A DNA stretch of 64,000 bases from Cyanophora paradoxa CCMP329 (taxonomy: Eukaryota; Plantae; Glaucophyta). How positions within the stretch are numbered: position 1 is the stretch's first letter; every line of letters begins with the position of its first letter. The notes under the pieces were generated by a model. It saw nothing but the letters and a program-made list of their open reading frames with translations, was not told the origin of the DNA and made no database searches. Shown piece after piece: positions 8,587 to 55,196 of this stretch. The position numbers and the translations under genes are program-made. Location of the stretch: assembly GCA_004431415.1 (NCBI GenBank), contig QPMI01000395.1:558001-622000 (forward strand), given 5' to 3'.

Positions 8587-9521
8587 GTTGCTCGTTTACG
8601 TCCTGCGTGTCACGTACGCGGCGTATGCCGGTGTGTCCGTAACGTACTGCGTCGCGATCGCGGCCGCCGTGTGGCCGACTACGAGGGCGAGGGCAGTCGA
8701 GCAGTCACTGCGTGTCGTTGGCCGAGCTGCTGACAGTGTTGTCAACAGCTGCGGAGCTCTCAGCGCGCGTGCACGAGCACGACGATCGCGACGAGAGTAC
8801 GACACGACAGCGACAGCAACGTGCAGTGCAGATCGCGCACCGATACACGTTGCCCTTTAGGCGTAACGAGCCGCAAGTCACGGGTCGCTACACGTAAAGG
8901 TCGAGTGATTTCGCCTCACTCTCTCCTGCACTGGGGCAGCGAGCCGCAAGACACGGGTCACTGCCTGCAGCGAGTGTTCGTTCCCGCACGTGTCCTGCGT
9001 AGAGCAAGGCACGCCGCGCGACAAGTTTGGCGAAGGACAAGGAAGTCAGCTCCGTCAGTTAGGTCGTGCTCCGGCCGGTCGGCGCGTCCAGCGGGCACGC
9101 GGTCGTGTAGTCTAGCACGTCCGTCGAGGATGACGCACTCTCCTCCCGCGGGTTCACGCCAGGTGGCGGCGGGTCGTTGTCGAACCGCCGTCAGGCCAGC
9201 GATCGTCCCGGCGAGGGTCAAATAGGCTTAGTTAGTGTCCCAATGTGATCCCAGCCCCATGCCTAGGCAGCAGGCGCGCAGGCGTAGCACGAACGGGTCG
9301 CAGCTGGGCTTCTTACAGGACTGAGGGGGTATCGAACAACGTAGGGGGGGGGTACAGAATCTGTCTACGAACCGGCAACGCCGGAGGAGTCCTAGGTACT
9401 GCGGAGGTACCGGCAAGTCTATGAGCTATTGAGAAGTGCTACAGCCTCAGCCCGCGCACTAGCACTATACTACAGAGTGGCTCGAAGGCCTGAATGCAAG
9501 CTAAACTACAGTGGCAACACA

Positions 9522-15500: not shown

Positions 15501-15602
15501 CTGGTTCGAGCTCTCCTCAGCCTCGGCGCGGGCGGCGAGAATCCGGAGCCGCAGCGCCTCAGTTACCCCAAAGCGGTAACTGACGGTCACTGCGGCGGCC
15601 AT
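9522..15602 (-). pseudogene. Paralogue B of the repeated-domain gene; interrupted by the retroelement in an intron within the 4th domain repeat
   Basis: Starts MAAAVTVSYRFGVTEALRLRIL at 15602 and has the same exon series as 16.7-24.8 kb (ATG offset 9190). The series stops after the ...RTSLDLLDLL exon (~9760). The rest of the gene may lie beyond the element, so inactivation is not proven. Confidence 0.6.
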
Positions 15603-16699
15603 GGATACGGGGGCGAGGCGCTCAGCTGCCGCTGCAGTTCTCTGTCATCGCTAGTCGGTGTCGACGGCCCCTAACTGCCGCTGGTGCTAGCGAACCCGAA
15701 TTGTCGTACCCCAGGCGGGCGTCTGGTTTGAGGCCGCTGCGCATGCGCATGCTTCGAATTCGTTGCGGCGCCCTGCGCCGCGCCACCGCTCGGCCACGCG
15801 AGCGGCCGGGCCGCCTCCGCTCGGCCACGCGAGCCCGCGCCTATAGCTAGGCCTGCGCATGCATCCGGCCGCGGCCGCAGCGGCGCGCCGGCGCCGCGCG
15901 CTCGGCCAGCCCTGCAGCCTAGGTCTAAATCTAGATCTAGCTATATATAGATCTGCGCGCGCGCACGCAGGCGCGCCGCTCCAGGTCTAGATCTGGGCGC
16001 GCGCCGGCGCCCGCGGCGCCGGCCGGCCCTAGCCTGCAGCAGCTGAGTCAAGTCCCGGCCCGCAGGTCTATGGCTAGCCCTAGTAAATCTTAATCTGTTC
16101 CATCGGACGTATGCATCAATATCCGCCCAGAAAGCTGCAGCCAATAAGCTAAGCCCGAGCCCGAGGGGAAGGCCTATAGCTAGCCGTGCACGTAGGGGCA
16201 TCGCCGCGGCGCCAGGGGAGGGGGGGGGGAAGGCCGAGGCTGGGTAAGCCGCAGCTGCAGCGGCGGCGGATCGGAGGCGGGCGGGCGGGCCCGGGATGCC
16301 GCCTGGCAGGTGCTGGGCCCGGCGGTCCCGGCCTCGATCGGGGCGCCGCGCCGGCCTCAAGCTCGGGGCGCCGCCCCGGCGGGCGCACGGGCCAGGCGGC
16401 GCCTCCACCCGCCCGCCCCGCGCCAGCCCCTCTTAAGCAGGCCTTGAGGCTGCGGATGAACCCGGGAGGGGGGGAGGGGTGGGGAGTCGGGGAGTTGCGG
16501 ATCGATGGAGGTGGGTGGGGAGGGTGGGTGGGGAGGGGGGGGGGGGGGGGGAAGGGGGGGGAGGTGGGAGGGCGGGGAGGGGGGGCCGGCAGGGGGGGGG
16601 AAGGGGGGGGGAAGGGGAGGGGGGGAAGGACGTGTCGGGGCGGGGGGGGGCGGGACAGGGGGGTACATGGTTGGGGGTGGAGGGGTAGGGATCTGGGTT

Positions 16700-19600: not shown

Positions 19601-22600
19601 CCACACCGGATCAGCCGGGTTATCAGTTCGAGGAATCAAAGATAACATAGTCAAGGCTAGTTAAGTAAAGGCCGACGCCAGGGCTGGTGCAGAGACTGCA
19701 TCTAGATCTAGATCTGCACGTGCGGCTGCAAACTTTTGATCATGAAGAGACGCACCCTCTCTGCTAGTGTTTGCCCCACAGGCCCAGGGGGGAGGCGTCG
19801 ACGCGATCCCGAACTGCGCTTCGATCCCGATCGGGAACTGCGCATGCGCTCCGATGTGAGGCGAGCGGAGAGCCGCCCACGCGGGAGGAACGGGCGCACC
19901 GCTGCTGCCCGTGAACGGTGCCGGCCGAGGCTGCGCCGCTGACCGCCGGGGCCGCTCGGGGGATCACGCTTGCGCTCGCGACCGCTGTCAAAGCAGGCCC
20001 GGCCGGTCCGGAGGTCCGGAGGGCGTCCGGCGGAGGCGGCCAAAGCTGCTGGCTGTAGTAGGGGCCGGCCGCGCCGCTGACCGCCGGGGCCGCTCCGTGT
20101 GCGGGGGCCGCGCTCGGGCCCGAGCTCGAAGCGGGCCCGGCCGGTCCGAGCGGCTGGCGTGCCGAATCCGGGGGACTGGCCGCGGCCGCGGCCCCGGCAG
20201 CTGCTGCCGGCGCCTCGCCCCTCTGAGGCGGTAGCGAGGTCCCCGCCTCCCTAAACAAGTTCAGATCAGATCAGATCTGAGGCGACGAAGCGAAAGGCTT
20301 GGAGATCGCGGTCCGCGGGCGCACCCGTTGGAAGCCTGCGCGCCGCCCTCCGCGGCCACCGCGACGCTCGTGCGCATGCTGAGGACGCTCTGCCGGGCTT
20401 GAGATCGTGCGGCCGCCTGCACTTGCCTTCGCGCCGCGTTCTTCTCCACCGCACTGCACAAGGAGAACATTCGTGATCAGCCCGATGCTTCAGAATCGTT
20501 AACGGTGCAGGCATCCATGGCCATCTACTAGCTAGTACTAGGCGAGATCGGTATGGCGCGTTGCACGCACGCTGCGATCTTCTCGCGGTTCCTCTCGTAC
20601 AAAGCCTTGAGATCGGCCAGGCCGCCGGGGTGGTAGGCCCGGAGGCGCGGGACGACGAACTGGTTCGCGTACATTGTGTACAGTGACTCGTTCACCGAAG
20701 TCGGCTTGCTCAGCAGGCTGGAGGCCAGATCGGGGTCTGTCGTCAGGTTGTATCTGCAAGCGAAGGAAGCTTGGTCAAGGGAGGGCCGACGGCGGGATGA
20801 TTTCCTTTGCTTCGAAAAGTATGCAAGATCGAGAGACGCTGACAGCCGACCGCGGGGGCCGGGCCGGGGCGCACGCACATCAGATCCGTCTTTTCAAGGA
20901 GGGATTTCCCGTAGTGGGCCAAGTGCGGTGTCCTGACTTCCTCGACCAACGGGCGCACGGCGCGGAACACTTGGCGGGGGATGTCCACGGTCACCACCCC
21001 CTGTTCCCGATTAGAGCAATTAATCAGCGATAATCTCGTGACGGATGGCGACGATAATATCCAATTCGATGAAAATTAAATGTTAGAGTGCACATTATTT
21101 CGAAGCGAGTGCGTGGGCGCTGCAATGAATGCGACAGAGGCGGCCATTGCATTGTAGGCAAGCGCCATATGCATGCTCTAGATCTAGATCTAGAATCTAC
21201 CCGTCTCACAATATTTTAATGAGCCGCGCGCCGTGTGCCTCGTCTTTGAAAATCGAAATCGTCGCGTCGAGCTCTAGACTAGCTTTAGCTAGGAGGCCGC
21301 GGCCGTGCACTCACCTCAAATGATTTGCGGAAAGCCGCCTCATCCCCGTTGAAGAATAAAGCGGTGCCGTAAGCGTAGGTCGGCCGGTCCGACTTGTGTT
21401 TTGGCTGCGCGCAGGGCTCGTCACGGCGTCCCTATCGGCAAATTCGAGAGCACTAGGAGGCCTAGGGGCGGAGAGTGCCTTTATTATTATTTATTACGGA
21501 TTTATTACGGGACGCGCCTTTTTGAGGGGACCGTCCGGCCCCGCCGAATTCGAAGGAACCGATCCGGCCGTGGGGCCTACGCCTGCGACAGGGCTCGCGG
21601 TTGATCGCGAGCTCGACGCGACCCGACAGTAAAGGATCTGCAGCTGGATTCGCGATCGCGTTTCGGACCTTGGACGTCGGCGGCGCCACCCGAGCCCGCG
21701 GGCGCGCCCCCCGCACCCGCCCGGGCCCCGCGGCCGCCCTCGTCGTCGCCCGAGCCCGACGACGAGCCCCCCGCAGCCGTCTCCCTAGAGGCAACGCAAG
21801 CAGAGATCGCATCAGAGGCAACGAAGCGAGGCCTGAGCATGAAGAGCGAGGTCCGCGGGCGCACTCGTTCGGATCGGGCGCGCCTGCCTCCGCGCCCGTT
21901 GCCACGCTCGTGCTGGCGCTGTTCTTCTGGGCTCGCCTGGCGGCCAGCTCCTGCCTGCGCGCCTCGTTCTTCCCCACCGCGCTGCACGGAACGGAAAATA
22001 TTAACTAAAGTGCAGGACCAGCCCAATATTCATGCTTCAATTTTGCATCGTCCGATCGGGGTGGGGCGACGTGTGCACGCACGCTGCGATCTTCTCGCGG
22101 TTCTTCTCGAACACGGCCTTCAGCTCGGCCAGGCCGCCGGGGTGGTAGGTCTGGAGACGCGGGACGACAAAATCGTCCGCATACTTAATGTACTGTGAGA
22201 GGCGCTTCTCGGTTTCCTTGTCCATCGAGCTGAGGGCCGATTCGCGGTTTGTCGCCAAGTTGTATCTGCGAGAGACGAAATCAAAAAGAATTTGAGAGAC
22301 AGCAGCGGGCGCACAGCAGATCCATCATCTCGAGGGAGGATGTCCCGTACTGAGCGATGTGCACCGGCCTCACTTCCTCGAGCAGCGGCCGCACTGTGAT
22401 GAAGACCGCCCGCGGGATGTTCCCGGGGATCTTGTGCTGTCCTCGATGCCATATATAGAATCAGCGAGAATTCGAATATCGTGAAAACCTTAAAAGTTTA
22501 TGATCATAGGCACTAGATGTGAATGGGAATGGGAAGAATATTAATGCGATCGATCTCGCACGTGATAACGATATCGAAGGAGAAACTCTAAGCAAGCACA

Positions 22601-24792
22601 TGCTCATCAATGTGTCAAGGTATAAAGGCACTCGGCCGAATATCACATGCACCGCGCTCACCTCGTACGATGCGCGGAACGCCGCCTCATCCCCGCCGAA
22701 GAATAAATCGATACCCTGAGATTCGACTTGCTTGCGATGGGTGAGCTTCGGCGCTTTCGGGGCCGGGGCATCCGAAGAGCCGCTCGAGCTCGACGAGGAG
22801 CTCCCGGCGGCTGTATCCCTTGAGATCGCGCAGAAGAATCAATCAGAGAAGCGAGGCTTGCAATTGCAATTGATCATAAAGAGCGGGGTCTTTGGGCGCA
22901 CTCGTTTGAAGCCTGCGCGCCCCTTTCCTTCACCGCACTCTTGAGAGCTCGCTTGGCAGCCAGCTCCTGGCGGCGCGCAGCGTTTCTCTCCACCGCGCTG
23001 TAGGGAAAGAATGACATCTTCATCAGCCCGATATCGATGCTGCAGATTTAAAAATACTTGATCGGTATCCAAACGGGCAGGGACTTACGCTGCAAGTTTC
23101 TCTCGGTTCTTTTCGTAGACGGCCTTGAACTCGGCGGGGCCGCCGGGCCCGGAGTAGCGCGACTGGAGGCGTGGGATGATGTGCTTGTCTATGTACATCA
23201 TGTACACTGCGAGGCGTGTCGCAGTCGCCTTGTCCATCGCGCTCAGGACCGATTCCCGGTCTGTAGCAAGGTTGTATCTGCGAGGAATTTACTTCAAAGC
23301 ATGCGCAGTGGAAGGCCATCATGATCAAATGGATTGCCAAGTTGCTTCGAAATTTAATTTAAAGGATTCGCGGGACGACCACGGGACGCACATCAGATCC
23401 ATCATCTCGAGAGAGGCTTTTCCAAAACAAGTAAGACTCTTTGACTTGACTTCCTCGAGCAACGGACGCGCCGCGACGAAAATGGCCCGAGGGATTTGTA
23501 CGCTCACTACGCCCTGTCCCCGATCCCATCCATCAGAGAGAATCTCGTGACATGATAGCGGAGCGCAAGCGCCAGCTTAGCCTGTTATCGATAGCTCTAG
23601 ATGCACGTATATATGCATTTGTACGGGAAATGATCATTTTCGCATGAAACAAATTAAAGAAGATACTTTAAACAAGCACCGCGCTCATGCACGTGTCACT
23701 TAATTAATTAGAAATCTTTCGGTTACAGACTAGAAATCACTTAATTAGAATGCACAAGTACTAGTGCCATTATACACCAAAAATAGAGATAATTAATATT
23801 ACACTCACTTCATATGATCTGAGGTACGCCGCCTCATCCCCGTCGAAGAATAAGGCAGTGCCGTAAGAATCGACGTAATCGCGCGAGACACCTTTCTGCG
23901 TTTGCGCGTGGGCAAGGGCGCGGGGCCCATGCGGGGCGGGTGTATCAGGAGAGTCAAAGAAACTAGCTTTGGAGGGGCCGCGCGCAGGCTGCAGCTGCAC
24001 GCCGTGTGACGCGCACCTTCTCGCGGGGAGGCTTCCGCTCCCGGTCGCGACGTTGACGCTTCGAAGGCTTGGGGGCTGATACTGCTGCTGATGCTGATGC
24101 TGCTGCTGACGACGATGCCGCTGCCGCTGCCGGCCGCTCCGCGTCCGGGGCGACGACGGAAGCAGCGGCCGCCTGCGCCGTCTGCTCGTCCTGCAGCTCC
24201 TCGCGCATCAAGCCGATGATGGGCGCGAAGCGCGGGTCGGCCTCCAGCCGCTCGCGCCTGGGGACCCTCTCCCCGCGCTCCAGCGCCAGGAAGAACAGTG
24301 CGTCGCAGACGAGCGCGTGCCCGCGGCTCTCCAGCCGCAGGTGCTCCTCCAGCGCGCCCTTCACCGCCTGCGCACGTCGGCGCGCGCGCCGGCGTCAGCA
24401 GACTCGCGACGCTGCGCGTGAGGGAGCTCGGGCGGGCGCGCCTCGTCCGTGGCGAGCTGTTTGAAGACGCCGGGCGCCCGCAGCTGGAGGATCGCAAGAT
24501 CCTCCGCCGGCACCGACCCCGGAGCTCCCGCCTTCTGCAGGATCTCTCGCGCTAGGAAGCTGCGAATGCCGGCGGTCGCCACGGCGCCATGGCCATGGCC
24601 AGCCGGCGCCGCGGCGCCGGCCGCGGCCGCGCCCGGAAACTTGCTCGCGCCGGACACGAGCCGGTCGAGAGCCGTGACCGCAGCTGGAATCTGGTTCGAG
24701 CTCTCCTCTGCCTCGGCGCGGGCGGCGAGAATCCGGAGCCGCAGCGCCTCAGTTACCCCAAAGCGGTAGCTGACGGTCACTGCAGCAGCCAT
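16700..24792 (-). CDS. Paralogue A: multi-exon hypothetical protein with four copies of an unrecognised ~130-aa helical domain separated by low-complexity linkers (3' end approximate)
   Basis: ATG at 24792. The recurring exon set FF(N/D/G)GDE(A/T)A(F/Y)xxS(Y/F)x | P/CxxxFxA/TxRPLLxEV...LExxDL | YNLATD...Y..Y....VPRL...PGGLAELKAVYERNREK | AVxKNxARR occurs at ~23.8-22.9, 22.7-21.8, 21.3-20.3 and 19.5-18.3 kb, with GTGAG/GTGCG donors at equivalent positions. Confidence 0.7.
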
Positions 24793-26099
24793 GGATACGT
24801 GGGCGAGGCGCTCAGCTGCCGCTACAGTTCCCTGTCATCGCTAGTCGGTGTCGACCGCCCCTAACTGCCGCCGGTGCTGGCGGACCCGAGCTGTCGTACC
24901 CCTGGCCGCTTGACGCGGCAATGACGCCGCTGCGACGGTGACGTCGACGCCGCTGCGCCGTCTCCGGCGCCCTGCGCCGCGCCACGGCTCGGCCACGCGA
25001 GCGGCCGGGCCGCCTCCGCGCCTGCGGATGCAGCGCTAGCTAATTTTATAAAGCCGGCGACGGCCGCGGCCGCCGCCGCGCGCGCGCCAGATCTAGAGCC
25101 CTCCAGCCAAGATCATCGGATCTATAGCTAAATCTAGCCGCGCAGCGCGCGGCGGCGCCCGCATGCAGCCGCGCGTGCGCCAGCCTAGCCAGCTGTAGTA
25201 TAAGTAGCAGCTGAGTCATGATCAAGTCTCGCAGGTCTATAGCTAACCCTAGTAGATCTAGATCTGGAAAGGAGAGGCCCTTAGGTCTGTGCCTATCTTG
25301 TGGCAAACTTCAAATTGATTTTATAGACAAATTTTTTGGACCTAGGTACCCATTTTCGACCCATATAGCTAACCCTAGTAGATCTAGATCTGGACAATCG
25401 TACGTATGGCATCAATATCGGCCCGATAAGCTGCAGCCTCTCCAACTCAGTCACCCCGGGCCGGGGCCGGCCCTGAAGCCTCGTGTGTGTGGGAGGAGAC
25501 CGCCGAGGGGGGTGGGACCGCCGGGCGGTCCGGACCCGATCCGTCGGCCCCGGAACGCCCGCCGGTCCCGCCGCGGGAGGAGGGGGGTGGGGGAGGAGAT
25601 CGATCAGGGACGAGGCGACGGGGCGGCGCCGGCCCGCCGGCCCCCCGCCTCCAGCCGGAAGCAAGCGCACGGGGGCCGGTCGCCGCCTGGCGAGGCGCGA
25701 GGCCGTTTCTGCGAACGAAGCGTCAGGGGGTACCGAAGCGCCGGGGGCGGCCCGGGAGCGCGCGGGGCACCCGAACCGGTCTTCGGGGTACCCAAATCGG
25801 ACGTCGGGTACCCGCCGGCGTTCCAGCGGAGGAAGTGCTCGAGGCACGGTACCCCCGGGCGCATTGAGCCAGGGGGGTACTCCGTCGGCCGATCTCGCGC
25901 GAAGCCCGATCAGTCCGCCCGCGCCAGGGCTCTCGCCCGTGCTGCTGTACCCATCAGCGAGCAGGTGCAGCGCAGTGGGGTGAGGGGGGATGGGGGAGGG
26001 AGGGGAGGGCGGGAGAGGAGGGGGAGGAGGGGGGGGGGGCGAGGGGCGGGGGCGGGCGGGGGCGGGGGGCGGGGGGGGGGGGGGGGGGAAGGTTGAGAG

Positions 26100-32297: not shown

Positions 32298-37193
<4,896 letters not shown>

Positions 37194-42943: not shown

Positions 42944-45900
42944 CTACTCGACCATGGCGGAGGAGAGGGGGGTGAGGGATCCGAGCGAGGGCGCCGCGTC
43001 GGGCGAGGGCCGCGCCGACGCGGACGCGTGCGCTGCGATGTGCACCGCGTTGAAGCACGGCAGCCATTTCTGCGAGCGGAACCGTCAGAAGAGCTTAAAA
43101 GGAAGGAAGGGAGCTTCGCGGACCTTGACGAGCTCGTAGAGGACGGACTGGGAGAGGGCGCGGGCGGCGAGGGCGTCCCCCTCGAGCCCCGCGGCGGCGG
43201 CGGCGGCGGCGGGCTCGACGGGGTGCAGCACGGCGAGGGCGCCCACGACGGCGCCGTCGGCGTCGCGGCGGGGCGCGGCGTAGATCGCCACCTCGAGGCC
43301 CGGGCTGTGGCCGGCCCGCGTGCGCACGAAGCCGGCGAGCTCCAGGCCGGCGGGGGCCTCCGACGCCACGGAGAAGGCGGTGGGCGCCGGCGAGGCCGGC
43401 GCGAAGGTCGCCGGCGGCGTCGCGGCGCCGCTGGACTCCAGCGCCGAGTCGGGGCGCGCCGGCGTCCCCATCCCCGCCGGGCCCGACGAGGAGGAGGAGG
43501 CCGGCGCGTCGCGCACGAGCCGCTCGAAGAGGTCGCGGACGGCGGGCTGGCCCTGGAAGGCCCGGGCCAGCAGCGGGGCGCCCAGCATCTCGGAGCGGGG
43601 CAGGCCCGTCAGCTTGGAGGCCGCCAGGTTCCACTCGCTGATGAGGAGATCGCGGTCGACGGCGAGCAGCGGGAGGGGCATCGTCTCCACGAGGGCGTCC
43701 ACCTCCTGTTGGAACACGCCCAGCAGTTCCGCCCCCGCCTGCTCCACCTTGTCGTGCAGGCGCCGCAGCACGCCCTCGCGCCCCACCGCGCTGGGCGCCG
43801 GCGAGCCGGGCTCCGACCCCGAGGCCCCGAAGCCGCAGGCGGCGGCGTCGAGGACGGTCATGCGGAGGGCGCGGGCGCAGGTGAGGTCCCGCTGCGAGAA
43901 GGGCGCCGCCTTGCCCTTGACGAGCTGCGAGAACCGCTGGAACGAGGCGCGCGGGTTCAGGCTCCCGTTCTCCCCGTGCAAGATCGCGTCCTGGGGAGAG
44001 GGGCGTCAGGAGGGCGCGGGGCGGGGCGGCGGGGGGGCAGCCGGCGGCCGCCGCTGACCTGGAGGGGCCCGCCCCAGTTCTCCTCCTGGACCACCTCCGG
44101 CCGGAACCACAGCGCGTACTGCGGGCAGGGGGTGAGCGAGTGAGGGGCGGAGGGCGGAGGGAGGCTCGGGAGAGCCGCGGAGGGGGCGGATCGGATCGGG
44201 GCGCACGTCGCCCGGGGCGGAGGAGAGGGAGACGGCGAGGAGGCCGGAGGCGACGGTCCGAAGGTGGACCGCCCCCTCGAAGTGCTCCGAGAGGCAGTCC
44301 GTCACCCACACCTGCCGCGGTTCCCGTCAGGGCCCGATCTAATCTCAGATAAATCTAATCTCGGGCGCCCACCTCGTCGGTCATGTTGGTGTTGAGCCAC
44401 TCGACGAGGTCCTTGACGTCGACGGCAGAGGGCGTCCGTCCGAAGGCCGCGAGGCCGCGCGCCCGCGTGTAGACCGCCGCGCCCCCGCAGTCCAGCACGT
44501 CGAAGACCGTCGGCCGCCCCGCGTACAGCGCCTGGCGGAGGCGCAAAGAGAGTCAAGGTTGAGCTTGGGTCGGCTTGGATGATGACGGGCCCCTGGCACC
44601 TCGGGGAAGCAGGCGTGGGCGAGGAGCTGGTCGAGGAACTGGCCCTGGACCTCCTTGGCCCGCGCCACGTGCTGCCGCGCCTCCTGCTGCTCCTGCGCGG
44701 CGCAGGCGGGCGTTCCCCCGCATCAGATGGCCAGCTTTGGAGAGGAAGAGGGGCCAGCCGGGGCGGACCTTGCGGGCGAGGAGGGCGGAGAGGACGCGGG
44801 AGAGGAGGGCGCAGGCCTCGCGGTGCTCGAAGGAGAGGCGCTTGGGGGAGTAGGAGTAGCAGATGAAGAGGCCCCACAGCTTCTTGTCCTTGACGATCGC
44901 GTTCGAGATCGAGGCCGCCACGCCCATGTTCTTCAGGTACTGCGGGCGCACGTCAGACGAGAAGGGAGCCGGCGCGCTGCTGTTCTGCTTCGGCCGGAGC
45001 GGACCTGGGTGTGGCAGCGGGAGACGCAGCGGAGGACCGAGCGGCTCATGTCCAGCGGCCGCTCCGTGACGGGGCTCACCCCGGGATACACCTCCGCCGG
45101 CTCTGCGCGGGCCGGCGATCAGAGCCGAGCTCGGAGGACGGGCGAGCGGGTCCGTGCAGGGGCGCACTGGCGTAGGCGTCGGCGATGACGCGGACGCGGT
45201 TGAGGACGAAGAGGTTTCTCGCCACCGTCGGGATGTCCGTCGACGCTGCGCAGGGGGCAGAGAGGAGGGGTTGGCTGGGGCTGGGGCTGGGGCTGGGGCT
45301 GGGGCGGGGGCGGGGGCGGGCGGACGGAAGTTGAGGCCGAGGTAGGGCTCGAGGCCCTCGCGCCGCAGCACCTCCGCCAGCACCTTCCCGTGCCCTGCGG
45401 GGGGGGCTCAGGGGGAGGGGGGGGGTGAAGGGAGGGGGGGGGGGTTGGGGCGCGCGCCCTCCGGGCCGAAGCGGTAGACCATCACGCGGTCGTACCCCGT
45501 GATCTGCGCGCGTGGGGGGCGTGAGGGGGAGGGGGGAGGGAGCCGCGGGGGGTACGGGGCGGGGCGCACGTCGGAGACCTCCTGGGCGAGGATCTGGCAG
45601 AGCTCCTGCGCGGGGGAGGCGGGCGCGCGCTCGAAGCTTAAGCGAGCTTCCAAGCCGAGAGCTAAGCTAAGAGCTAGCTTAAATAAGCTAATAAGCTTAT
45701 AAGCTTATATAAGCTCCTAAGCTGGCGGGCGGGGCGGGCGGACCTCGACGCCGGAGGCGTTCTCGAGGTTCTCGAGGGCGGCGCGGATGCGCCCCGAGTC
45801 GGAGAAGGCCAGCGTCACGTCCCGGCTGCGAGGCGCGCGTCCCCGAGCCGAGTCAGGCCAAGCAGAGCTGGAGCTGGAGCTAGGAGGCGGCTGCCTCTTC

Positions 45901-47596
45901 TTCGGTGGCGCGTCTTAGAGATTACGGCTGAGCCAAAGCCAAAGCTCGAGCGCTCACGGCCGGGCGGCGGCGGGGGGGGGGGGGGGGGGGGGGGCACCTG
46001 AAGGGCTCGAGCTCGAGGACGAGGCAGGAGGAGGCGCGGTGGAGGGCGGCGTCCCACAGGAGCCGCACGCCCGTGTCCCGCCGCACCGTCGAGAGGAGGA
46101 CCGGCCCGGGCGTCCTCACCTCCCCGCCCTCCCCCACCGCCTGCAGCAGGGGACGTGAGCGAAGAAGAGGGGCGGCTCGAGGAGGGGGGCTTGCTTGCCT
46201 GCTGGACGGCGCGGCAGGACTCCTCGTCGAGGACGGCGGAGAGGGGCTGGTTGAGGAGCTGGTCGGCGGGGATGGCGAGCAGCGCCTCCACGTTGTTCGA
46301 CACCTGCGCGCGCGCCGCGGCCCTCAGGCTCTCCGCTTCGTGGTTTACGCGTGGAGCCAGGCACGGAGCGCGAGCGGAGCAGAGCCGGCGGCGCGGGCGG
46401 ACCTGGGCGATTGTCCAGTCCGTGTCGCGCACGGCAAAGAGGAGCCCGTAGTTCTGCACGGCTCCGATTGTCGCGATCGCCTCGTAGTGAACCTGCCGTC
46501 CGGTACCCGTCGGATCGAATTTGAGCCCGAATTTGATCCGGCCCGAGAATTTGATCTGCGCGCACCTGCCGCGCCGTGACGGCGTCGATGAAGGCGTCGG
46601 GGCGGCCGCCGTCCTCCGCAGCCTGCGGGCGGCCCCGGGCGCGTGAGCTCGAGCCGGGCGGCCGCCGGCAAGCGCTTTGGATTCCGCTCTGCGACGGGCC
46701 GCACCCGGCGCTTGCGCTTCGCGATGGCCGCATCCGTGTGGACGTGCTGCGCGAGGAAAGCGAGGCGATGCGTCAGCCGGGGCTGCGGGGCGAGCGTGCG
46801 AGCGAGCTGGGCGGGGAGAAGGGCGCACGGGATCCGTGAGGCTGGAGACGCGGAAGCGCTCGAGCTCGGCCATCATGGCGTCCTTCTCGCGCTGCAGGCG
46901 CGCGTTCTGCGGAGCGAATTCGAATCGGGGGTCAGCGCGGCGTCGTCGTCGCGGGGCGGCGGGGCGGGCCGCGCCTCGCCCTGGAGGTTGTTCTGCGAGA
47001 ACGATTGCGTTAGAACGACGTCTGTCCTGTACGAAGCTCAAGACGAGGCGCGTACGCACCACGTGCTCGATCGCATCGCCGAGGATGGAGGCCTTGTTGC
47101 CCTTCGAGGAGGCTGCTTCCGGCACGATGCGCCGCAGCTCCTCGATGCGCTCATTGATCAGGTCACGCCGGCGGCGCTCGATCTCGCTGTGCGAGCCCTT
47201 CTTCTTGCCCTCCTTGGGCGCGTCGCCTGCTGACGACGGCGTTCCGGAGCTGTCCGGCGAGCCCATGCTCATCGTCATTCCAAACGGTGAGGTCTGCATG
47301 TTCGGGAGGCCCAGCTGCTGAAGTCCCGCCTGGGCGAGCTTCTGGGCCGCGGCATTCGCGACCTGCGCGTACGAACGTCTCAATCCCCGGACGCGGCTGG
47401 TGTGCGGTCAGCTCGCCTGCTGGATGAGCGCTGCACTCTGATCCGACCCTAGAAAAGACTCCAACTGCGATGATCGATCAGCGACAGAGAGGGGAGCGAA
47501 GGACGCCGCAGGCCGCACAGCGAATTCGGGCTGTTGAGGCTGCGGTTGCCCTGCACGTCCTCCGCGCGCTCCCGAACCACGATCGTTACGCGGCAT
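42944..47596 (-). CDS. bHLH-zipper/phytochrome fusion protein: bHLH-ZIP, NLS, PAS-GAF-PHY, PAS; ~983 aa, 23 exons, no histidine kinase
   Basis: Manual exons: 47596-47519, 47464-47417, 47362-47060, 46992-46975, 46906-46829, 46746-46705, 46622-46566, 46492-46403, 46303-46199, 46140-45998, 45825-45744, 45605-45570, 45503-45458, 45394-45326, 45245-45168, 45102-45005, 44939-44769, 44692-44600, 44531-44373, 44311-44207, 44118-44059, 43990-43124, 43069-42944 (2952 nt, no internal stop). Motifs: SHSEIERRRRDLINERIEELRRIVP...NKASILGDAIEHV (bHLH); IGAVQNYG, HR..LVLELEP (PAS); TGYDRVMVYRF, EPYLGLNFPSTDIP, LRCVSRCHTQYLKNMGV, LWGL (GAF); WFRPE, WGG, PRASF (PHY); LVETMPLPLLAVD...WNLAASKLTG (PAS). Confidence 0.9.
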
Positions 47597-48052
47597 GCTG
47601 GATGTTTCAGCTGGTGACCTAAGAGCTTGACGTACGCGACGGAGGAGGTCCGGGTGTTCGCCTGGAACTTCGGTGACCTTATCCGCAGCGTCGCCCTCGA
47701 GATCGCTGGCGCTCCTACGATGGATGGCCTTCTCAGCTCTCCGGCTTCGCTCGCTGCCGCCCGGATGACTGCCTCTGGGTCGGGACGAGATCCTGCTTTT
47801 TCGATGGGGGTACCGTGGAGCGAAGCTGTCCGGCGGCGGCGCGTCCGGCTCTTGTTGAGCGCGAGCAGCTAGCTACAAGGCCTACGCGCACTTTAGGAGG
47901 ACGGCCCCGTTGCCCCGGCGCCCCGGTGAGCGGGATCGGCCCGGCCTTGACCTGAGCTGGACCAGCGCGTACGCGCGCCGCAGACGCTGATCGTGAGACG
48001 AGCAGTTCATGTCCTCCGCTTCTCACTGGCGCAGTGAGGACGGCGCTCCGCC

Positions 48053-49542
48053 ATGGCGGAGGGAGCTGGCGGGCCCGCGCTCGAGCATCCTTTGCGTCGC
48101 TATCTCCAGGGTGCGAGTTCGGGGCGTGCGGGGACTTGTATGCGTCCTTCTCGTCGATCGGTCGTGGGCGTGCGCAGGACGGACGCCGCGTCGCTGCAGG
48201 CATGCGCGGCACGTACGAGGACAGCGACGCGGAAGGGTCGGCGGACTCCGACGGCTCCCTGTGGCTCTGGGAGCTCCCCGCTGACCTCGAAGCGCTGTCC
48301 TGGTACGTTCACCTCGGCCCCGCTTCCTCTCTTCTCGTCCCCGCTTGAGCTTCAGGTCGCCCCGGCCCGGCCCAGGTCCGCCGCGGCGCCGCCGCCGGCG
48401 CCGCTGCAGGTGGAGAAGGCGCACTACGGCGAGGACGTGCGCTCGCTCTGCTTTGCGCCGGACGGCGAGCGCCTCGCGAGCGGCGGAGCCGACTGCCTCG
48501 TGCGGCTCCGCTGCGCGCGCTCGGGCCGCGAGGCCTCGGCCGTCGCCGGGCACTCCGATCCCGTCCTCTGCCTCGCCTTCTCCTTGGTCCGAATCCGCCC
48601 CGCTATATTCCTTCTTCCGCGGAGGTTTCGAGCTCCTCGCCCAGGACGGCCTGAGGCTCGCCTCGGGGGGGAACGGCGTGCGCCTCTGGGACCTCTCGAG
48701 CGGTACCCCGAGCTGCCTCGCCGTGTACCCCTCCGACGACCCCGTCCACGCCCTTGCCCTCCGACCGTCCCCCGCGGCCTCGGGGGAGGGGTACCGGCTC
48801 CTGGCGGGCGACGCTGGCGGCCGGCTACGGCTCCAGCTCTGGCTAGCCGCGGAGGGGAAGGGGGGTACGAAGCTCCTGGATGTCGCAGCCCACTCGGACA
48901 TCGTTTCGGGCGCCGCGTTCTCCGCGGTAAGCTCCGCGCTTCTTAAAGCTTCGCCTTGTACCCCTCCTCCGGATTCGATCCCGACGCCCCGGCGCGCAGG
49001 GTGGCGATCGCGTCATGTCCTCGGGTACGACGAGAGCGTCCGCGTGTGGGACGCCTCCACGGGGCGGAGGCGGCCCGGGTACAGGGGACTCCCGGAGGCG
49101 TCTGGTCCCTCGCCCTCTCGGAGGAGCGCGTACCCCCAGCCGCTTCGATTCCCCCCCGCCCCGACTCGAACCCGCGCAGGACGGGCGCCTCGCCCTGTGC
49201 GGGGGCGACGCGGCGGCTCTCGCCCTGCCCCTGGACTTGGAGGGAGACCCGGGCGGGCCTTCTTAGGGGAGGCGGTCCGGCTTCCCGGGCCGGCGCGGTG
49301 CGTGGCGCTCTCGGCGGACGGGCGGCTGGCGGCCACGGCGGGGCCGGCGGGCCCCGTAGCCCTCCACGGCCCCGGGAGGCCCGCAGCGGACCGAGCGACG
49401 CGGGAGGAGCGGGTGCGGGCGGCGCTGGCGGAGGCGGCCGGGGGCCGCCGGCCTGGAGCTCGAGGCGGCGCTGGCGACCCTCCCGAGGGCGGAGCTCGAG
49501 GCGCTCGCCGCGGCGGTCGCGCGCGAGCTCGCCCGTCGCTAG
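48053..49542 (+). CDS. WD40-repeat protein, copy 1 (frameshifted by 1-nt homopolymer deletions)
   Basis: VRSLCFAPDGERLASGGADCLVRL; GHSDPVLCLAFS|DGLRLASGGNGVRLWDL; AHSDIVSGAAFS..YDESVRVWDA. Several G runs are one base shorter than in copy 2. Confidence 0.7.
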
Positions 49543-49667
49543 GCGGCACCGTACGCGTTTGTAGGACGGCGTTACCGATTACAGAAGCCCGAGAAGCTCG
49601 CCCGGCGCTAGGTAGGCCTAGGGCGCAGTGGCTCTCGTGAGAGAGAGCGTCGCGTTACAGACGAAGG

Positions 49668-50377
49668 CTACAGCTCGGAGGGGGCGGCGGCCTCGGCGTC
49701 GCAGAGGTCGTCGGCAAACGCGTCGGCCAGGGCGGCGGCCGCGTCGGCGTCGCAGCTGGCGGCTCCCGCCGCCTCCGAAGGGAGCGCGTCCAGCGCCGCG
49801 GCGGAGAGCTCTACGCACGCCGTACCCTCCTCCTGCGCCGCGTCCGGGGGCGTCAGAGGCGGCGGGGCGGAGGGGTGTCAGAGGCGGAGGCGGCCCGGGG
49901 CCCGCACCTCCTCCGCCGCGGCCTGAATGTCGGAGTCGAGCCGCTGGGGCAGCAGAAGGTACTCTGCGCGCGCGGGGCTCGGCCGGGCGGTCGGGCGCGC
50001 GCCGGCGGGTTTGCAAAAGCGCCGGGGCGCACCGTTCGGCTGCAGCGAGCCGTCCGCGTTGCCTTCGGCGTCGATCTCTTTGAACTGCGGCGGCGTGAGC
50101 CCGCGGGCGGAGAAGGATGGGACGGGTTCGGCCGGCGCGCCGGCGTGCTCACATTCTCCATGTACTTGCTATCCTGGCCCGTGTTGGTGGTCGGGAGCCC
50201 GCGCTTGGTGCACTGGAAGTTCCGGTACTCCTCGAAAGACACGTCGCCGCTCTTGTCGACGTCCATGTGCTTGAACTCGGCATAGAACGGGCCTGCCGAC
50301 AAGACTCGTCAGAAACGGACCCAGCCGCGAAGCGCGGGTTCGGAGCGGCACTCACTGGAGCGAAGGTGGTACGACAT
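49668..50377 (-). CDS. Small EF-hand protein, copy 1 (5 exons)
   Basis: FKHMDVDKSGDVSFEEY is a canonical EF loop; a second degenerate loop reads FKEIDAEGNADGSLQPNEY. The gene splices in frame from ATG 50377 to TAG 49668. Confidence 0.8.
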
Positions 50378-50655
50378 GGCGCTCGTGGGATCCCGGCGTG
50401 CGCCGCCCGGTTGGATTTCGCTCAGCTAGCTAGAGGAGCGGGAGGGTGCCGGCGCCCGCGGCTGCTTCCACTGTCGGGTTGCCCTACGATCGGTAAACGG
50501 AAAGTCTGGTGGGAATTCGGGAGAGGCTGGCTCTCTGTAGCGGCGGTTAGCGTGCTCCGAGCACAGTACCCCCCGGGCCGGTCGACTTTGCGCGTTCTCG
50601 GCGGTGCCGCCACGCCAGGATGGTTCGTAGAGGCCATTTCCATCTATGCTAGGGT

Positions 50656-52032
50656 CTAAGAGCTCCCTCCGGCGGAGAGGGGCTGGTTGAGGAGCTGGTC
50701 GGCGGGGATGGCGAGCAGCGCCTCCACGTTGTTCGACACCTGCGCGCGCGCCGCGGCCCTCAGGCTCTCCGCTTCGTGGTTTACGCGTGGAGCCAGGCAC
50801 GGAGCGCGAGCGGAGCAGAGCCGGCGGCGCGGGCGGACCTGGGCGATTGTCCAGTCCGTGTCGCGCACGGCAAAGAGGAGCCCGTAGTTCTGCACGGCTC
50901 CGATTGTCGCGATCGCCTCGTAGTGAACCTGCCGTCCGGTACCCGTCGGATCGAATTTGAGCCCGAATTTGATCCGGCCCGAGAATTTGATCTGCGCGCA
51001 CCTGCCGCGCCGTGACGGCGTCGATGAAGGCGTCGGGGCGGCCGCCGTCCTCCGCAGCCTGCGGGCGGCCCCGGGCGCGTGAGCTCGAGCCGGGCGGCCG
51101 CCGGCAAGCGCTTTGGATTCCGCTCTGCGACGGGCCGCACCCGGCGCTTGCGCTTCGCGATGGCCGCATCCGTGTGGACGTGCTGCGCGAGGAAAGCGAG
51201 GCGATGCGTCAGCCGGGGCTGCGGGGCGAGCGTGCGAGCGAGCTGGGCGGGGAGAAGGGCGCACGGGATCCGTGAGGCTGGAGACGCGGAAGCGCTCGAG
51301 CTCGGCCATCATGGCGTCCTTCTCGCGCTGCAGGCGCGCGTTCTGCGGAGCGAATTCGAATCGGGGGTCAGCGCGGCGTCGTCGTCGCGGGGCGGCGGGG
51401 CGGGCCGCGCCTCGCCCTGGAGGTTGTTCTGCGAGAACGATTGCGTTAGAACGACGTCTGTCCTGTACGAAGCTCAAGACGAGGCGCGTACGCACCACGT
51501 GCTCGATCGCATCGCCGAGGATGGAGGCCTTGTTGCCCTTCGAGGAGGCTGCTTCCGGCACGATGCGCCGCAGCTCCTCGATGCGCTCATTGATCAGGTC
51601 ACGCCGGCGGCGCTCGATCTCGCTGTGCGAGCCCTTCTTCTTGCCCTCCTTGGGCGCGTCGCCTGCTGACGACGGCGTTCCGGAGCTGTCCGGCGAGCCC
51701 ATGCTCATCGTCATTCCAAACGGTGAGGTCTGCATGTTCGGGAGGCCCAGCTGCTGAAGTCCCGCCTGGGCGAGCTTCTGGGCCGCGGCATTCGCGACCT
51801 GCGCGTACGAACGTCTCAATCCCCGGACGCGGCTGGTGTGCGGTCAGCTCGCCTGCTGGATGAGCGCTGCACTCTGATCCGACCCTAGAAAAGACTCCAA
51901 CTGCGATGATCGATCAGCGACAGAGAGGGGAGCGAAGGACGCCGCAGGCCGCACAGCGAATTCGGGCTGTTGAGGCTGCGGTTGCCCTGCACGTCCTCCG
52001 CGCGCTCCCGAACCACGATCGTTACGCGGCAT
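50656..52032 (-). pseudogene. Truncated duplicate of the bHLH-phytochrome gene (bHLH-ZIP, NLS and half of the PAS domain, ~265 aa)
   Basis: Matches exons 1-9 (offset 4436) up to LLNQPLSA, then reads across the duplication junction as GGSS* (TAG at 50656-50658). Confidence 0.75.
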
Positions 52033-52489
52033 GCTGGATGTTTCAGCTGGTGACCTAAGAGCTTGACGTACGCGACGGAGGAGGTCCGGGTGTTCGCCTG
52101 GAACTTCGGTGACCTTATCCGCAGCGTCGCCCTCGAGATCGCTGGCGCTCCTACGATGGATGGCCTTCTCAGCTCTCCGGCTTCGCTCGCTGCCGCCCGG
52201 ATGACTGCCTCTGGGTCGGGACGAGATCCTGCTTTTTCGATGGGGGGTACCGTGGAGCGAAGCTGTCCGGCGGCGGCGCGTCCGGCTCTTGTTGAGCGCG
52301 AGCAGCTAGCTACAAGGCCTACGCGCACTTTAGGAGGACGGCCCCGTTGCCCCGGCGCCCCGGTGAGCGGGATCGGCCCGGCCTTGACCTGAGCTGGACC
52401 AGCGCGTACGCGCGCCGCAGACGCTGATCGTGAGACGAGCAGTTCATGTCCTCCGCTTCTCACTGGCGCAGTGAGGACGGCGCTCCGCC

Positions 52490-53986
52490 ATGGCGGAGGG
52501 AGCTGGCGGGCCCGCGCTCGAGCATCCTTTGCGTCGCTATCTCCAGGGTGCGAGTTCGGGGGCGTGCGGGGACTTGTATGCGTCCTTCTCGTCGATCGGT
52601 CGTGGGCGTGCGCAGGACGGACGCCGCGTCGCTGCAGGCATGCGCGGCACGTACGAGGACAGCGACGCGGAAGGGTCGGCGGACTCCGACGGCTCCCTGT
52701 GGCTCTGGGAGCTCCCCGCTGACCTCGAAGCGCTGTCCTGGTACGTTCACCTCGGCCCCGCTTCCTCTCTTCTCGTCCCCGCTTGAGCTTCAGGTCGCCC
52801 CGGCCCGGCCCAGGTCCGCCGCGGCGCCGCCGCCGGCGCCGCTGCAGGTGGAGAAGGCGCACTACGGCGAGGACGTGCGCTCGCTCTGCTTTGCGCCGGA
52901 CGGCGAGCGCCTCGCGAGCGGCGGAGCCGACTGCCTCGTGCGGCTCCGCTGCGCGCGCTCGGGCCGCGAGGCCTCGGCCGTCGCCGGGCACTCCGATCCC
53001 GTCCTCTGCCTCGCCTTCTCCTTGGTCCGAATCCGCCCCGCTATATTCCTTCTTCCGCGGAGGTTTCGAGCTCCTCGCCCAGGACGGCCTGAGGCTCGCC
53101 TCGGGGGGGAACGGCGTGCGCCTCTGGGACCTCTCGAGCGGTACCCCGAGCTGCCTCGCCGTGTACCCCTCCGACGACCCCGTCCACGCCCTTGCCCTCC
53201 GACCGTCCCCCGCGGCCTCGGGGGAGGGGTACCGGCTCCTGGCGGGCGACGCTGGCGGCCGGCTACGGCTCCAGCTCTGGCTAGCCGCGGAGGGGAAGGG
53301 GGGTACGAAGCTCCTGGATGTCGCAGCCCACTCGGACATCGTTTCGGGCGCCGCGTTCTCCGCGGTAAGCTCCGCGCTTCTTAAAGCTTCGCCTTGTACC
53401 CCTCCTCCGGATTCGATCCCGACGCCCCGGCGCGCAGGGTGGCGATCGCGTCATGTCCTCGGGGTACGACGAGAGCGTCCGCGTGTGGGACGCCTCCACG
53501 GGGGCGGAGGCGGCCCGGGTACAGGGGACTCCCGGAGGCGTCTGGTCCCTCGCCCTCTCGGAGGAGCGCGTACCCCCAGCCGCTTCGATTCCCCCCCCGC
53601 CCCGACTCGAACCCGCGCAGGACGGGCGCCTCGCCCTGTGCGGGGGCGACGCGGCGGCTCTCGCCCTGCCCCTGGACTTGGAGGGAGACCCGGGGCGGGC
53701 CTTCTTAGGGGAGGCGGTCCGGCTTCCCGGGCCGGCGCGGTGCGTGGCGCTCTCGGCGGACGGGCGGCTGGCGGCCACGGCGGGGCCGGCGGGCCCCGTA
53801 GCCCTCCACGGCCCCGGGAGGCCCGCAGCGGACCGAGCGACGCGGGAGGAGCGGGTGCGGGCGGCGCTGGCGGAGGCGGCCGGGGGGCCGCCGGGCCTGG
53901 AGCTCGAGGCGGCGCTGGCGACCCTCCCGAGGGCGGAGCTCGAGGCGCTCGCCGCGGCGGTCGCGCGCGAGCTCGCCCGTCGCTAG
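52490..53986 (+). CDS. WD40-repeat protein, copy 2 (apparently intact; start approximate)
   Basis: Same WD40 motifs as copy 1. The frame is continuous through MSSGYDESVRVWDASTGAEAARVQG...ARCVALSADGRLAATAG...ELARR*. Confidence 0.85.
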
Positions 53987-54111
53987 GCGGCACCGTACGC
54001 GTTTGTAGGACGGCGTTACCGATTACAGAAGCCCGAGAAGCTCGCCCGGCGCTAGGTAGGCCTAGGGCGCAGTGGCTCTCGTGAGAGAGAGCGTCGCGTT
54101 ACAGACGAAGG

Positions 54112-54821
54112 CTACAGCTCGGAGGGGGCGGCGGCCTCGGCGTCGCAGAGGTCGTCGGCAAACGCGTCGGCCAGGGCGGCGGCCGCGTCGGCGTCGCAGC
54201 TGGCGGCTCCCGCCGCCTCCGAAGGGAGCGCGTCCAGCGCCGCGGCGGAGAGCTCTACGCACGCCGTACCCTCCTCCTGCGCCGCGTCCGGGGGCGTCAG
54301 AGGCGGCGGGGCGGAGGGGTGTCAGAGGCGGAGGCGGCCCGGGGCCCGCACCTCCTCCGCCGCGGCCTGAATGTCGGAGTCGAGCCGCTGGGGCAGCAGA
54401 AGGTACTCTGCGCGCGCGGGGCTCGGCCGGGCGGTCGGGCGCGCGCCGGCGGGTTTGCAAAAGCGCCGGGGCGCACCGTTCGGCTGCAGCGAGCCGTCCG
54501 CGTTGCCTTCGGCGTCGATCTCTTTGAACTGCGGCGGCGTGAGCCCGCGGGCGGAGAAGGATGGGACGGGTTCGGCCGGCGCGCCGGCGTGCTCACATTC
54601 TCCATGTACTTGCTATCCTGGCCCGTGTTGGTGGTCGGGAGCCCGCGCTTGGTGCACTGGAAGTTCCGGTACTCCTCGAAAGACACGTCGCCGCTCTTGT
54701 CGACGTCCATGTGCTTGAACTCGGCATAGAACGGGCCTGCCGACAAGACTCGTCAGAAACGGACCCAGCCGCGAAGCGCGGGTTCGGAGCGGCACTCACT
54801 GGAGCGAAGGTGGTACGACAT
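54112..54821 (-). CDS. Small EF-hand protein, copy 2
   Basis: Matches 49668-50377 at offset 4444. Confidence 0.8.
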
Positions 54822-55196
54822 GGCGCTCGTGGGATCCCGGCGTGCGCCGCCCGGTTGGATTTCGCTCAGCTAGCTAGAGGAGCGGGAGGGTGCCGGCGCC
54901 CGCGGCTGCTTCCACTGTCGGGTTGCCCTACGATCGGTAAACGGAAAGTCTGGTGGGAATTCGGGAGAGGCTGGCTCTCTGTAGCGGCGGTTAGCGTGCT
55001 CCGAGCACAGTACCCCCCGGGCCGGTCGACTTTGCGCGTTCTCGGCGGTGCCGCCACGCCAGGATGGTTCGTAGAGGCCATTTCCATCTATGCTAGGGTC
55101 TAAGAGCTCCCTCCGTGTGCCGCAACCGCCGATTCCGCTGCGCAACGTACCGACGAACCCGCCCTCGCAACGAGCAGGTCGCCGTAACGGAGAGTG

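What the first reader, a model, noticed from the sequence alone, without database searches (positions are those of the whole stretch)
42944..47596. Phytochrome fused to an N-terminal bHLH-zipper: candidate one-component light-regulated transcription factor
Seen: 23 exons with GT/GC-AG borders splice into one stop-free frame. The bHLH exon is joined to the photosensor by four short phase-0 exons (NNLQGE | NARLQREKDAMMAELERFRVSSLTDP | HVHTDAAIAKRKRR | AAEDGGRPDAFIDAVTARQ | VHYEAIATIGAVQNYG). That leaves no stop, intergenic gap or suitable separate ATG directly before the PAS domain. Established: phytochrome outputs are normally C-terminal (His kinase/REC, GGDEF/EAL and others), and plant phytochromes signal by binding separate PIF bHLH factors. 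The basic region here has the H-E-R signature of G-box (CACGTG) binders, as PIF/Max/USF-type bHLHs do. Inference: a bilin-based analogue of aureochrome (bZIP-LOV) that couples photoconversion directly to DNA binding, and a possible Rosetta-stone parallel to phy-PIF signalling with optogenetic potential. I do not recall this architecture being described, but could not search.
Basis: partly seen in the sequence, partly recalled or inferred. Interest (0 to 1): 0.96.

Follow-up and report, generated by a model that had tools for sequence, protein, structure and literature searches.

The report
Phytochrome fused to DNA-binding bHLH-zipper
The alga Cyanophora paradoxa expresses one gene that joins a DNA-binding transcription-factor domain to a phytochrome light sensor, a pairing conserved in related algae and already in sequence databases, but one I found no study of, so direct light control of DNA binding remains untested.

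Summary
Real. The 23-exon model gives a 983-aa bHLH-zipper–PAS–GAF(Cys)–PHY–PAS protein, identical to Cyanophora paradoxa gene model g9919. Spliced RNA contigs from two studies run unbroken from the 5'UTR through the bHLH into GAF. The fusion is ancient: the same architecture occurs in a paralogue (GenBank 'phytochrome sensor 2'), in Gloeochaete and in a third glaucophyte-type sequence. The DNA-contacting basic helix is as conserved as the bilin-binding GAF (73% vs 73–75%), and the ancestral kinase/receiver tail is decayed or lost. An NLS-like motif stays 20–24 residues before PAS. The bHLH is not a PIF (rejected, p=3e-5); it groups with glaucophyte bHLH-LOV-LOV proteins, so one bHLH family carries both sensor types. 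The pocket is canonical except His290→Tyr (Cph1 numbering), so the photocycle is uncertain. An exact 4.4-kb tandem duplication adds a truncated, sensor-less copy, transcribed in one run. Best reading: a one-component, bilin-based light-regulated G-box transcription factor; light response and DNA binding are inferred, not shown. The architecture is catalogued in databases; no paper I could read discusses it, but five key Rockwell/Duanmu papers were unavailable. The scan noted bHLH-LOV relatives elsewhere in this genome, not this fusion.

The parts
42944..47596 (-). Full-length gene, 23 exons, 983 aa: bHLH-ZIP, NLS-like motif, PAS-GAF-PHY, PAS, remnant receiver helix (= C. paradoxa tig00020510_g9919.t1). 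Transcript extends 5' to at least 47796
47060..47203 (-). bHLH (aa 96-143, exon 3) with group-B H-E-R basic region
   Evidence: Pfam HLH E=9e-15; basic region nearly invariant in four fusions
46829..46992 (-). Exons 4-5: end of helix 2 and three-heptad zipper (d: L,L,M,F; a: N,K,L); in-frame ATGs at 46876/46873
   Evidence: AF2 continuous helix 132-172; exon 4 seen between joined exons in RNA
46705..46719 (-). KRKRR, NLS-like motif (aa 185-189, exon 6), 24 aa before PAS
   Evidence: K(K/R)x(K/R) 20-24 aa before PAS in all four fusions; function inferred
45998..46492 (-). N-terminal PAS (PAS_2), exons 8-10
44775..45746 (-). GAF domain, exons 11-17, with DIP (D402), Y370, R417, R449, Y458
45011..45016 (-). 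Cys454-His455, the plant/Cph1-type bilin attachment site
44856..44858 (-). Tyr485 at the position of the D-ring His (Cph1 His290); shared by all six glaucophyte phytochromes examined
43841..44653 (-). PHY domain with WGG and PRxSF tongue (PRASF at 43940-43954)
43220..43705 (-). C-terminal PAS domain with a disordered Ser/Pro/Ala-rich insert
43031..43150 (-). Terminal helix (ELVKKWLPCFNA), homologous to the last helix of the receiver domain of other glaucophyte phytochromes; kinase and rest of receiver absent
46234..55115 (.). Exact head-to-tail duplication of a 4.44-kb unit (46234-50671 and 50670-55115), 2-bp microhomology, no substitutions
   Evidence: DNA run X14 has one 4446-nt unitig at about twice the flanking depth
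50656..52032 (-). Truncated copy: bHLH-ZIP, NLS-like motif and half a PAS, 265 aa, no GAF/PHY (= g9922.t1)
   Evidence: spliced X19 contig branches at 46234 into the junction sequence

Best explanation
A one-component, bilin-based, light-regulated transcription factor of glaucophyte algae. SHOWN: one expressed gene encodes bHLH-zipper plus a complete phytochrome sensor; the fusion is conserved across genera; the ancestral kinase-receiver output is dead or deleted. INFERRED from family knowledge: Cys454 binds a phycobilin (probably PCB), and the bHLH-ZIP dimer binds CACGTG-type boxes. INFERRED mechanism: bilin photoisomerisation refolds the PHY tongue and shifts the sensor's N-terminal extension and dimer arrangement. 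This gates DNA occupancy in two ways: by exposing or hiding the NLS-like motif that is tied to the sensor's N-terminus, and by changing whether two bHLH-zippers are held in a productive dimer. Rigid allostery is unlikely because the zipper-to-sensor linker is flexible and variable. The photoproduct may not be a canonical far-red Pfr because of His290-to-Tyr.
For: Single transcript chain in two studies; annotated protein identical. Same architecture in GPS2, Gloeochaete (a 6273-nt transcript contig with one 1412-aa ORF) and P0005. Basic region/helix 1 identity across genera 73%, equal to GAF at 73-75%, against 13-25% for the linker. Sensor cores of the four fusions form one clade (SH-aLRT 99). 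Kinase His replaced by Gly in the Gloeochaete protein; kinase absent in Cyanophora. Pocket and tongue motifs kept; AF2 core matches Cph1/BphP structures, TM 0.88-0.92 by target. NLS-like motif fixed 20-24 aa before PAS while zipper-to-PAS spacing varies 76-108 aa. Precedent: a DNA-binding domain fused N-terminally to a bacteriophytochrome core is light-switched through oligomer change (iLight, PMC8222386). The same bHLH family carries LOV domains with the NCRFLQ photoadduct motif.
Against: No biochemical data. His290 equivalent is Tyr; Cph1 H290A photoisomerises but fails to form normal Pfr (PMC12420706). Linker pLDDT 46-59, so no structural path from sensor to bHLH is visible. A diatom aureochrome binds its DNA element light-independently (PMC4937327). 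RNA evidence is unitigs, not single long molecules.
Confidence: 0.52

Rival explanations
1. A light-regulated transcription factor that stays on DNA constitutively. Light acts in the usual phytochrome direction, through the PHY helix to the C-terminal PAS and the retained receiver helix, changing co-regulator recruitment or protein turnover.
For: The terminal KKWLP helix is kept although the kinase and the rest of the receiver are lost (90% identical between paralogues; also the last element of the 1411-aa Gloeochaete protein). Flexible N-terminal linker. Light-independent DNA binding by diatom aureochrome 1a.
Against: The C-terminal region is far less conserved across genera (PAS 37-39%) than the basic helix, and the whole kinase/receiver block is dispensable in Cyanophora. 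The sensor-anchored NLS-like motif points to N-terminal coupling.
Confidence: 0.25
2. The sensor binds bilin but is not a useful light switch. The protein is a bilin-responsive (plastid retrograde) or blind transcription factor.
For: His290-to-Tyr. Earlier unchecked notes report several degenerate phytochromes in this genome.
Against: Attachment Cys-His, DIP, the Y176/Y263 equivalents, WGG and PRxSF are all invariant in four proteins from distant genera. The Tyr is shared with receiver-bearing glaucophyte phytochromes, so it is a lineage trait, not decay. Y203F is benign in Cph1.
Confidence: 0.15
3. The bHLH-zipper serves only as a dimerisation or partner-sequestering module and does not bind DNA.
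For: No DNA-binding data; no CACGTG in the gene's own upstream region.
Against: H, E and the RRRR block of the basic region are invariant in all four fusions; non-DNA-binding HLH proteins lose these residues (own knowledge).
Confidence: 0.05
4. Two adjacent genes, or an assembly chimera produced by the local duplication.
For: A tandem duplication breakpoint lies inside the gene at 46234. In-frame ATGs in the zipper exon. No long reads examined.
Against: The breakpoint is inside PAS, downstream of the bHLH-PAS join, so a single-unit allele still carries the fusion. Unbroken spliced contigs. Independent full-length fusions in GenBank and in a Gloeochaete transcriptome.
Confidence: 0.02

Closest known systems
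Glaucophyte phytochrome sensors (GPS), especially C. paradoxa 'phytochrome sensor 2' (AHB62100.1 / V9PWX6)
   Same: GPS2 is a paralogue (68% identity over 90%) with the identical HLH-PAS_2-GAF-PHY-PAS string. GAF Cys and a single C-terminal PAS as described for GPS (PMC4525182).
   Different: GPS are described as PAS plus histidine kinase with an intact His (PMC4525182); this clade has a dead or deleted kinase and an N-terminal bHLH-ZIP. In the papers I could read only GPS1 proteins are characterised (blue/far-red for CparGPS1).
Aureochrome (bZIP-LOV) of stramenopiles
   Same: N-terminal dimeric DNA-binding domain, C-terminal photosensor, ACGT-core targets, homo- and heterodimers (PMC4937327).
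   Different: bHLH-ZIP instead of bZIP; 500-residue knotted bilin sensor instead of a flavin LOV; no homology.
Glaucophyte bHLH-ZIP-LOV-LOV proteins (e.g. AML78265.1, AML78285.1)
   Same: Closest relatives of this bHLH-ZIP: one clade (93/96 careful tree, 99 quick tree), same zipper register.
   Different: Two LOV/PAS domains in place of PAS-GAF-PHY; no K(K/R)x(K/R) motif at the equivalent position. I found no study of them either.
Plant phytochrome-PIF module
   Same: Couples a GAF-Cys phytochrome to a G-box-type bHLH.
   Different: Two proteins in plants, one here. This bHLH is not a PIF and has a zipper; PIFs and canonical phytochromes arose in streptophytes (PMC13167755). Convergent.
iLight (engineered LexA-DBD-IsPadC photosensory core)
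   Same: DNA-binding domain fused N-terminally to PAS-GAF-PHY; single component (PMC8222386).
   Different: Synthetic, biliverdin-based, needed directed evolution; works by a dimer-to-tetramer shift.

Membership tests
Phytochrome (knotted PAS-GAF-PHY) | PAS-GAF-PHY tridomain in order | tested here: met
   Pfam; fold match to Cph1/BphP
Phytochrome (knotted PAS-GAF-PHY) | Bilin attachment Cys (GAF, plant/Cph1 type) followed by His | tested here: met
   C454-H455, invariant in the four fusions
Phytochrome (knotted PAS-GAF-PHY) | DIP motif and PHY tongue PRxSF/WGG | tested here: met
Phytochrome (knotted PAS-GAF-PHY) | D-ring His (Cph1 His290), typical of red/far-red members | tested here: not met
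   Tyr485; shared by the other glaucophyte sequences. Bears on colour tuning rather than on family membership
Phytochrome (knotted PAS-GAF-PHY) | Covalent bilin binding and reversible photoconversion | not testable with these tools
   needs holoprotein spectroscopy
Glaucophyte phytochrome sensors (GPS) | Sensor core groups with glaucophyte phytochromes | tested here: met
   clade with P0125/P0242, SH-aLRT 100; plant, cryptophyte and GPS1 sequences were not in the tree
Glaucophyte phytochrome sensors (GPS) | Single C-terminal PAS followed by a His kinase with intact His | tested here: not met
   PAS present; kinase absent here, His-to-Gly in the Gloeochaete relative. The paralogue named GPS2 also lacks it
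Group-B bHLH-ZIP (USF/MiT/Max/SREBP-like) | HLH fold with H-E-R basic signature | tested here: met
Group-B bHLH-ZIP (USF/MiT/Max/SREBP-like) | Zipper continuous with helix 2 | tested here: met
   heptad pattern; 41-residue helix in the model
Group-B bHLH-ZIP (USF/MiT/Max/SREBP-like) | Dimer binding to CACGTG | not testable with these tools
   needs EMSA or DAP-seq
PIF (plant bHLH VIIa) | bHLH orthologous to PIFs | tested here: not met
   AU test rejects a clade with PIF3, p=3e-5; only one named PIF in the tree, 76 columns
PIF (plant bHLH VIIa) | APB phytochrome-binding motif | tested here: not met
   no ELxxxxGQ-like match in the four fusions; motif pattern from own knowledge
Aureochrome | bZIP plus LOV | tested here: not met
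   bHLH and phytochrome instead; analogue, not member
Aureochrome | Light alters the DNA-binding module | not testable with these tools
   functional assay needed

The most novel reading that the evidence does not exclude
Glaucophytes have a private family of bHLH-zipper factors with interchangeable light sensors (phytochrome or tandem LOV). Because the dimerisation surfaces are close relatives, phytochrome- and LOV-bearing subunits heterodimerise on the same G-boxes, giving a single transcription-factor dimer that integrates bilin-sensed and blue light with no kinase cascade. The truncated sensor-less copy would act as a light-blind competitor.
Probability: 0.25. Interest if true: 0.92.

Novelty: new variant of a known kind. 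Interest (0 to 1): 0.74.

Why it matters
It would be a natural phytochrome that is itself a sequence-specific transcription factor, something I found described only as an engineered tool. It offers a testable answer to how phytochrome reaches gene expression in an archaeplastid lineage without PIFs, and shows the phytochrome-to-G-box-bHLH link arising twice by different routes. It is also a ready single-chain scaffold for optogenetic transcription control, and the shared bHLH with LOV proteins makes multi-colour integration at one promoter directly testable.

Tried and rejected
Two-gene and assembly-chimera readings: rejected. PIF ancestry: rejected. Duplication as an assembly artefact: rejected, since an independent DNA run has the 4446-nt unit at about double depth and an RNA-like run carries the junction. 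Non-glaucophyte members: none among the top hits of the bHLH search, two full-length searches, a fragment search, two metagenome scans or the Atlas; these blanks do not exclude independent fusions with unlike bHLHs. Organism of P0005 not resolved. Literature: ten searches found no paper linking a glaucophyte phytochrome with an HLH. Rockwell 2014 PNAS, Duanmu 2014 PNAS, Rockwell and Lagarias 2017 and 2020, Duanmu 2017 and the 2014 Front Ecol Evol review were not held, and figures are never held, so a drawn or brief mention there cannot be excluded. Diurnal expression could not be read because gene ids did not map and files were cut. No self G-box upstream of the gene. GPS1 sequences were not retrieved, so I could not check whether the photoactive GPS1 proteins share the His-to-Tyr change. 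My first exon 15 boundary was one base off and was corrected.
Full report
Observation. Reading the minus strand and picking GT/GC-AG borders gives 23 exons from ATG 47596 to a stop ending at 42944: 983 aa, no internal stop, 18 GT and 4 GC donors, median intron 68 nt. The linker exons 4-7 are exactly those quoted, are phase 0, and have GC3 of 0.93-1.00 like the sensor exons. Pfam on single exons by reference found HLH (exon 3), PAS_2 (exons 8-10), GAF (17), PHY (19, 20, 22) and PAS (22). As the operators asked, my own spliced model was never sent to a search tool: remote searches used exon references or database-returned protein ids, and the joined model was used only in local scripts.

One transcript. 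In RNA-like runs X15 and X17 (different studies) a single contig covers 47796 (or 47786) down to 44886; their lengths, 1625 and 1615 nt, equal the model's spliced length to the base. The listed joints include introns 1-8 (3 and 4 as one joint with exon 4 in between), 13, 15, 16 and 19-21; pieces show introns 18 and 22. None of these joints is in DNA run X14. These are unitigs, not long molecules, and the runs' RNA status is a guess by the tool, but precise intron removal identifies them as spliced RNA.

Identity. An exon-3 search of 1.84 billion representatives and cluster look-up place the window in the glaucophyte Cyanophora paradoxa. Gene model tig00020510_g9919.t1 (P0120) is 100% identical to my model. 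The genome's GC content and short introns fit (PMC6704402).

The fusion is a family. The best bHLH hits are themselves HLH-PAS_2-GAF-PHY-PAS proteins: C. paradoxa 'phytochrome sensor 2' (AHB62100.1, 881 aa, 68% identical), a 1411/1412-aa Gloeochaete wittrockiana protein encoded by one ORF on a 6273-nt transcript contig, and P0005 (1279 aa, organism not given; it groups with the Gloeochaete protein). Full-length searches found no others among listed hits. The four sensor cores form one clade (SH-aLRT 99), sister to two receiver-bearing glaucophyte-type phytochromes (100) (quick tree, bacterial outgroups only). The simplest reading is one fusion before Cyanophora and Gloeochaete diverged (inference).

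The output moved to the N-terminus. The two long relatives keep a recognisable kinase-like tail (profile E about 1e-13 to 1e-15), but in the Gloeochaete protein the phospho-accepting His is Gly. The Cyanophora pair has lost the kinase altogether and keeps only a terminal KKWLP helix matching the end of the receiver domain in P0125. Meanwhile the basic region and helix 1 are 73% identical across genera, equal to GAF (73-75%) and far above the linker (13-25%); H, E and RRRR are invariant. A three-heptad zipper follows, modelled as one helix, aa 132-172. PDB relatives are MYC2, USF2, MITF, SREBP1, BMAL1 and Max, consistent with CACGTG binding (family knowledge).

Not a PIF; sister to LOV fusions. 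The other top bHLH hits are glaucophyte bHLH-LOV-LOV proteins from Glaucocystis, Gloeochaete and Cyanoptyche. In bHLH-ZIP trees the four phytochrome and six LOV fusions form one clade (SH-aLRT 99, 110 rows; 93/96, 32 rows). A clade of the phytochrome fusions with PIF3 is rejected (p-AU 3e-5); monophyly of the phytochrome-fused bHLHs is not rejected (p 0.29). The alignments are short (76-80 columns) and ten weak hits were left out of the larger tree. PIFs arose in streptophytes (PMC13167755), so the phy-PIF parallel is convergence. Earlier scan notes report bHLH-LOV genes in C. paradoxa itself (not checked here).

Sensor. C454-H455, D402-I-P, Y370, R417, R449, Y458, WGG and PRASF are present and conserved. 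The model (mean pLDDT 76.5, core mostly above 90) superposes on Cph1 and BphP cores with TM 0.88-0.92 by target. Two departures in Cph1 numbering (mapped by motif alignment): Y203F, benign in Cph1, and His290 to Tyr; Cph1 H290A still isomerises but gives a blue-shifted product instead of Pfr (PMC12420706). The Tyr is shared by all six glaucophyte-type sequences seen, so it is a lineage trait. The tongue Cys of P0125/P0242 is absent here. Colour and even photoactivity are therefore unproven.

Mechanism. The segment between zipper and PAS has low confidence (pLDDT 46-59, with a shallow alignment there) and varies by 30 residues among relatives, which argues against rigid allostery. A K(K/R)x(K/R) motif, however, stays 20-24 residues before PAS in all four fusions and is absent at that place in the LOV proteins. 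It lies next to the N-terminal extension, which contacts the PHY tongue in IsPadC (PMC8222386) and in plant phytochromes (own knowledge). I therefore favour light-gated DNA occupancy through nuclear access and dimer arrangement (0.52). The rivals are constitutive DNA binding with light-gated co-regulator recruitment or turnover via the C-terminal PAS and helix (0.25; compare PMC4937327), a bilin-sensing or blind factor (0.15), a dimerisation-only bHLH (0.05) and an artefact (0.02). The first two together put a light-regulated transcription factor at about 0.75.

Duplication. 46234-50671 is repeated at 50670-55115 with no substitutions and eight single-base homopolymer indels; at two of these the DNA run sides with the upper copy, so they are assembly errors. 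An independent DNA run holds the unit as one 4446-nt unitig at about twice the flanking depth. The upper copy encodes 265 aa ending in half a PAS (g9922.t1). In run X19 an 835-nt spliced contig ends exactly at 46234 and a branch continues into the junction sequence; X15 and X17 show no such branch (contigs drop rare variants). This very recent, possibly culture-derived copy could supply a light-blind bHLH-ZIP partner (inference).

Novelty. The domain string has been in GenBank/UniProt under the name phytochrome sensor 2, and 'Cyanophora paradoxa 2' was in a 2015 phylogeny whose text describes GPS as PAS-kinase proteins and never mentions an HLH (PMC4525182). A 2025 review of algal photoreceptors has no HLH mention either. 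The primary Rockwell/Duanmu papers were not available, so a prior cartoon or sentence is quite possible. I found no functional study. Verdict: a real, conserved, expressed and apparently uncharacterised variant of phytochrome with a transcription-factor output; interest 0.74.

Noticed in passing
window 46234-50671 / 50670-55115: Exact 4.44-kb tandem duplication with 2-bp (CG) microhomology; it also duplicates the neighbouring genes. Real in an independent DNA run.
   Followed up: yes
window 47805 and 48120: Single-G deletions in the lower copy are contradicted by DNA run X14 at full depth: homopolymer assembly errors. Six more such indels lie at 49022-49449.
   Followed up: partly
window about 48050-49640 (+): WD40-like gene by eye (GH...WD-type repeats), divergent from the phytochrome gene across a few hundred bases and inside the duplicated unit; spliced RNA pieces at 48177-48564. 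No Pfam hit on the unspliced ORF.
   Followed up: partly
window about 49850-50300 (-): Small gene with an EF-hand-like loop (DVDKSGDVSFEEY) directly downstream of the truncated copy; the X19 branch contig runs at least 255 nt towards it.
   Followed up: no
window 46876 and 46873 (-): In-frame ATG pair in the zipper exon; an internal start would give an NLS-sensor isoform without the bHLH. No evidence either way.
   Followed up: partly
window 43508-43904: Non-canonical joint (21-nt side) in two RNA-like runs; probably a paralogue or repeat mis-laid here, unexplained.
   Followed up: no
window 9525-25438: Gene-poor, lower-GC stretch with diverged repeated blocks (e.g. 12192-16097 vs 21513-25266, 83%); probably decayed mobile elements.
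   Followed up: no
window 8026-8590 and 32993-33105: A 96-bp tandem array (5.9 copies, 93% matches) and a (TA)56 microsatellite.
   Followed up: no
P0125 and P0242 (other glaucophyte-type phytochromes): PAS-GAF-PHY-PAS-REC with no kinase hit and a Cys just before the tongue PRxSF motif (LCPRSSF), a candidate second-Cys site.
   Followed up: partly
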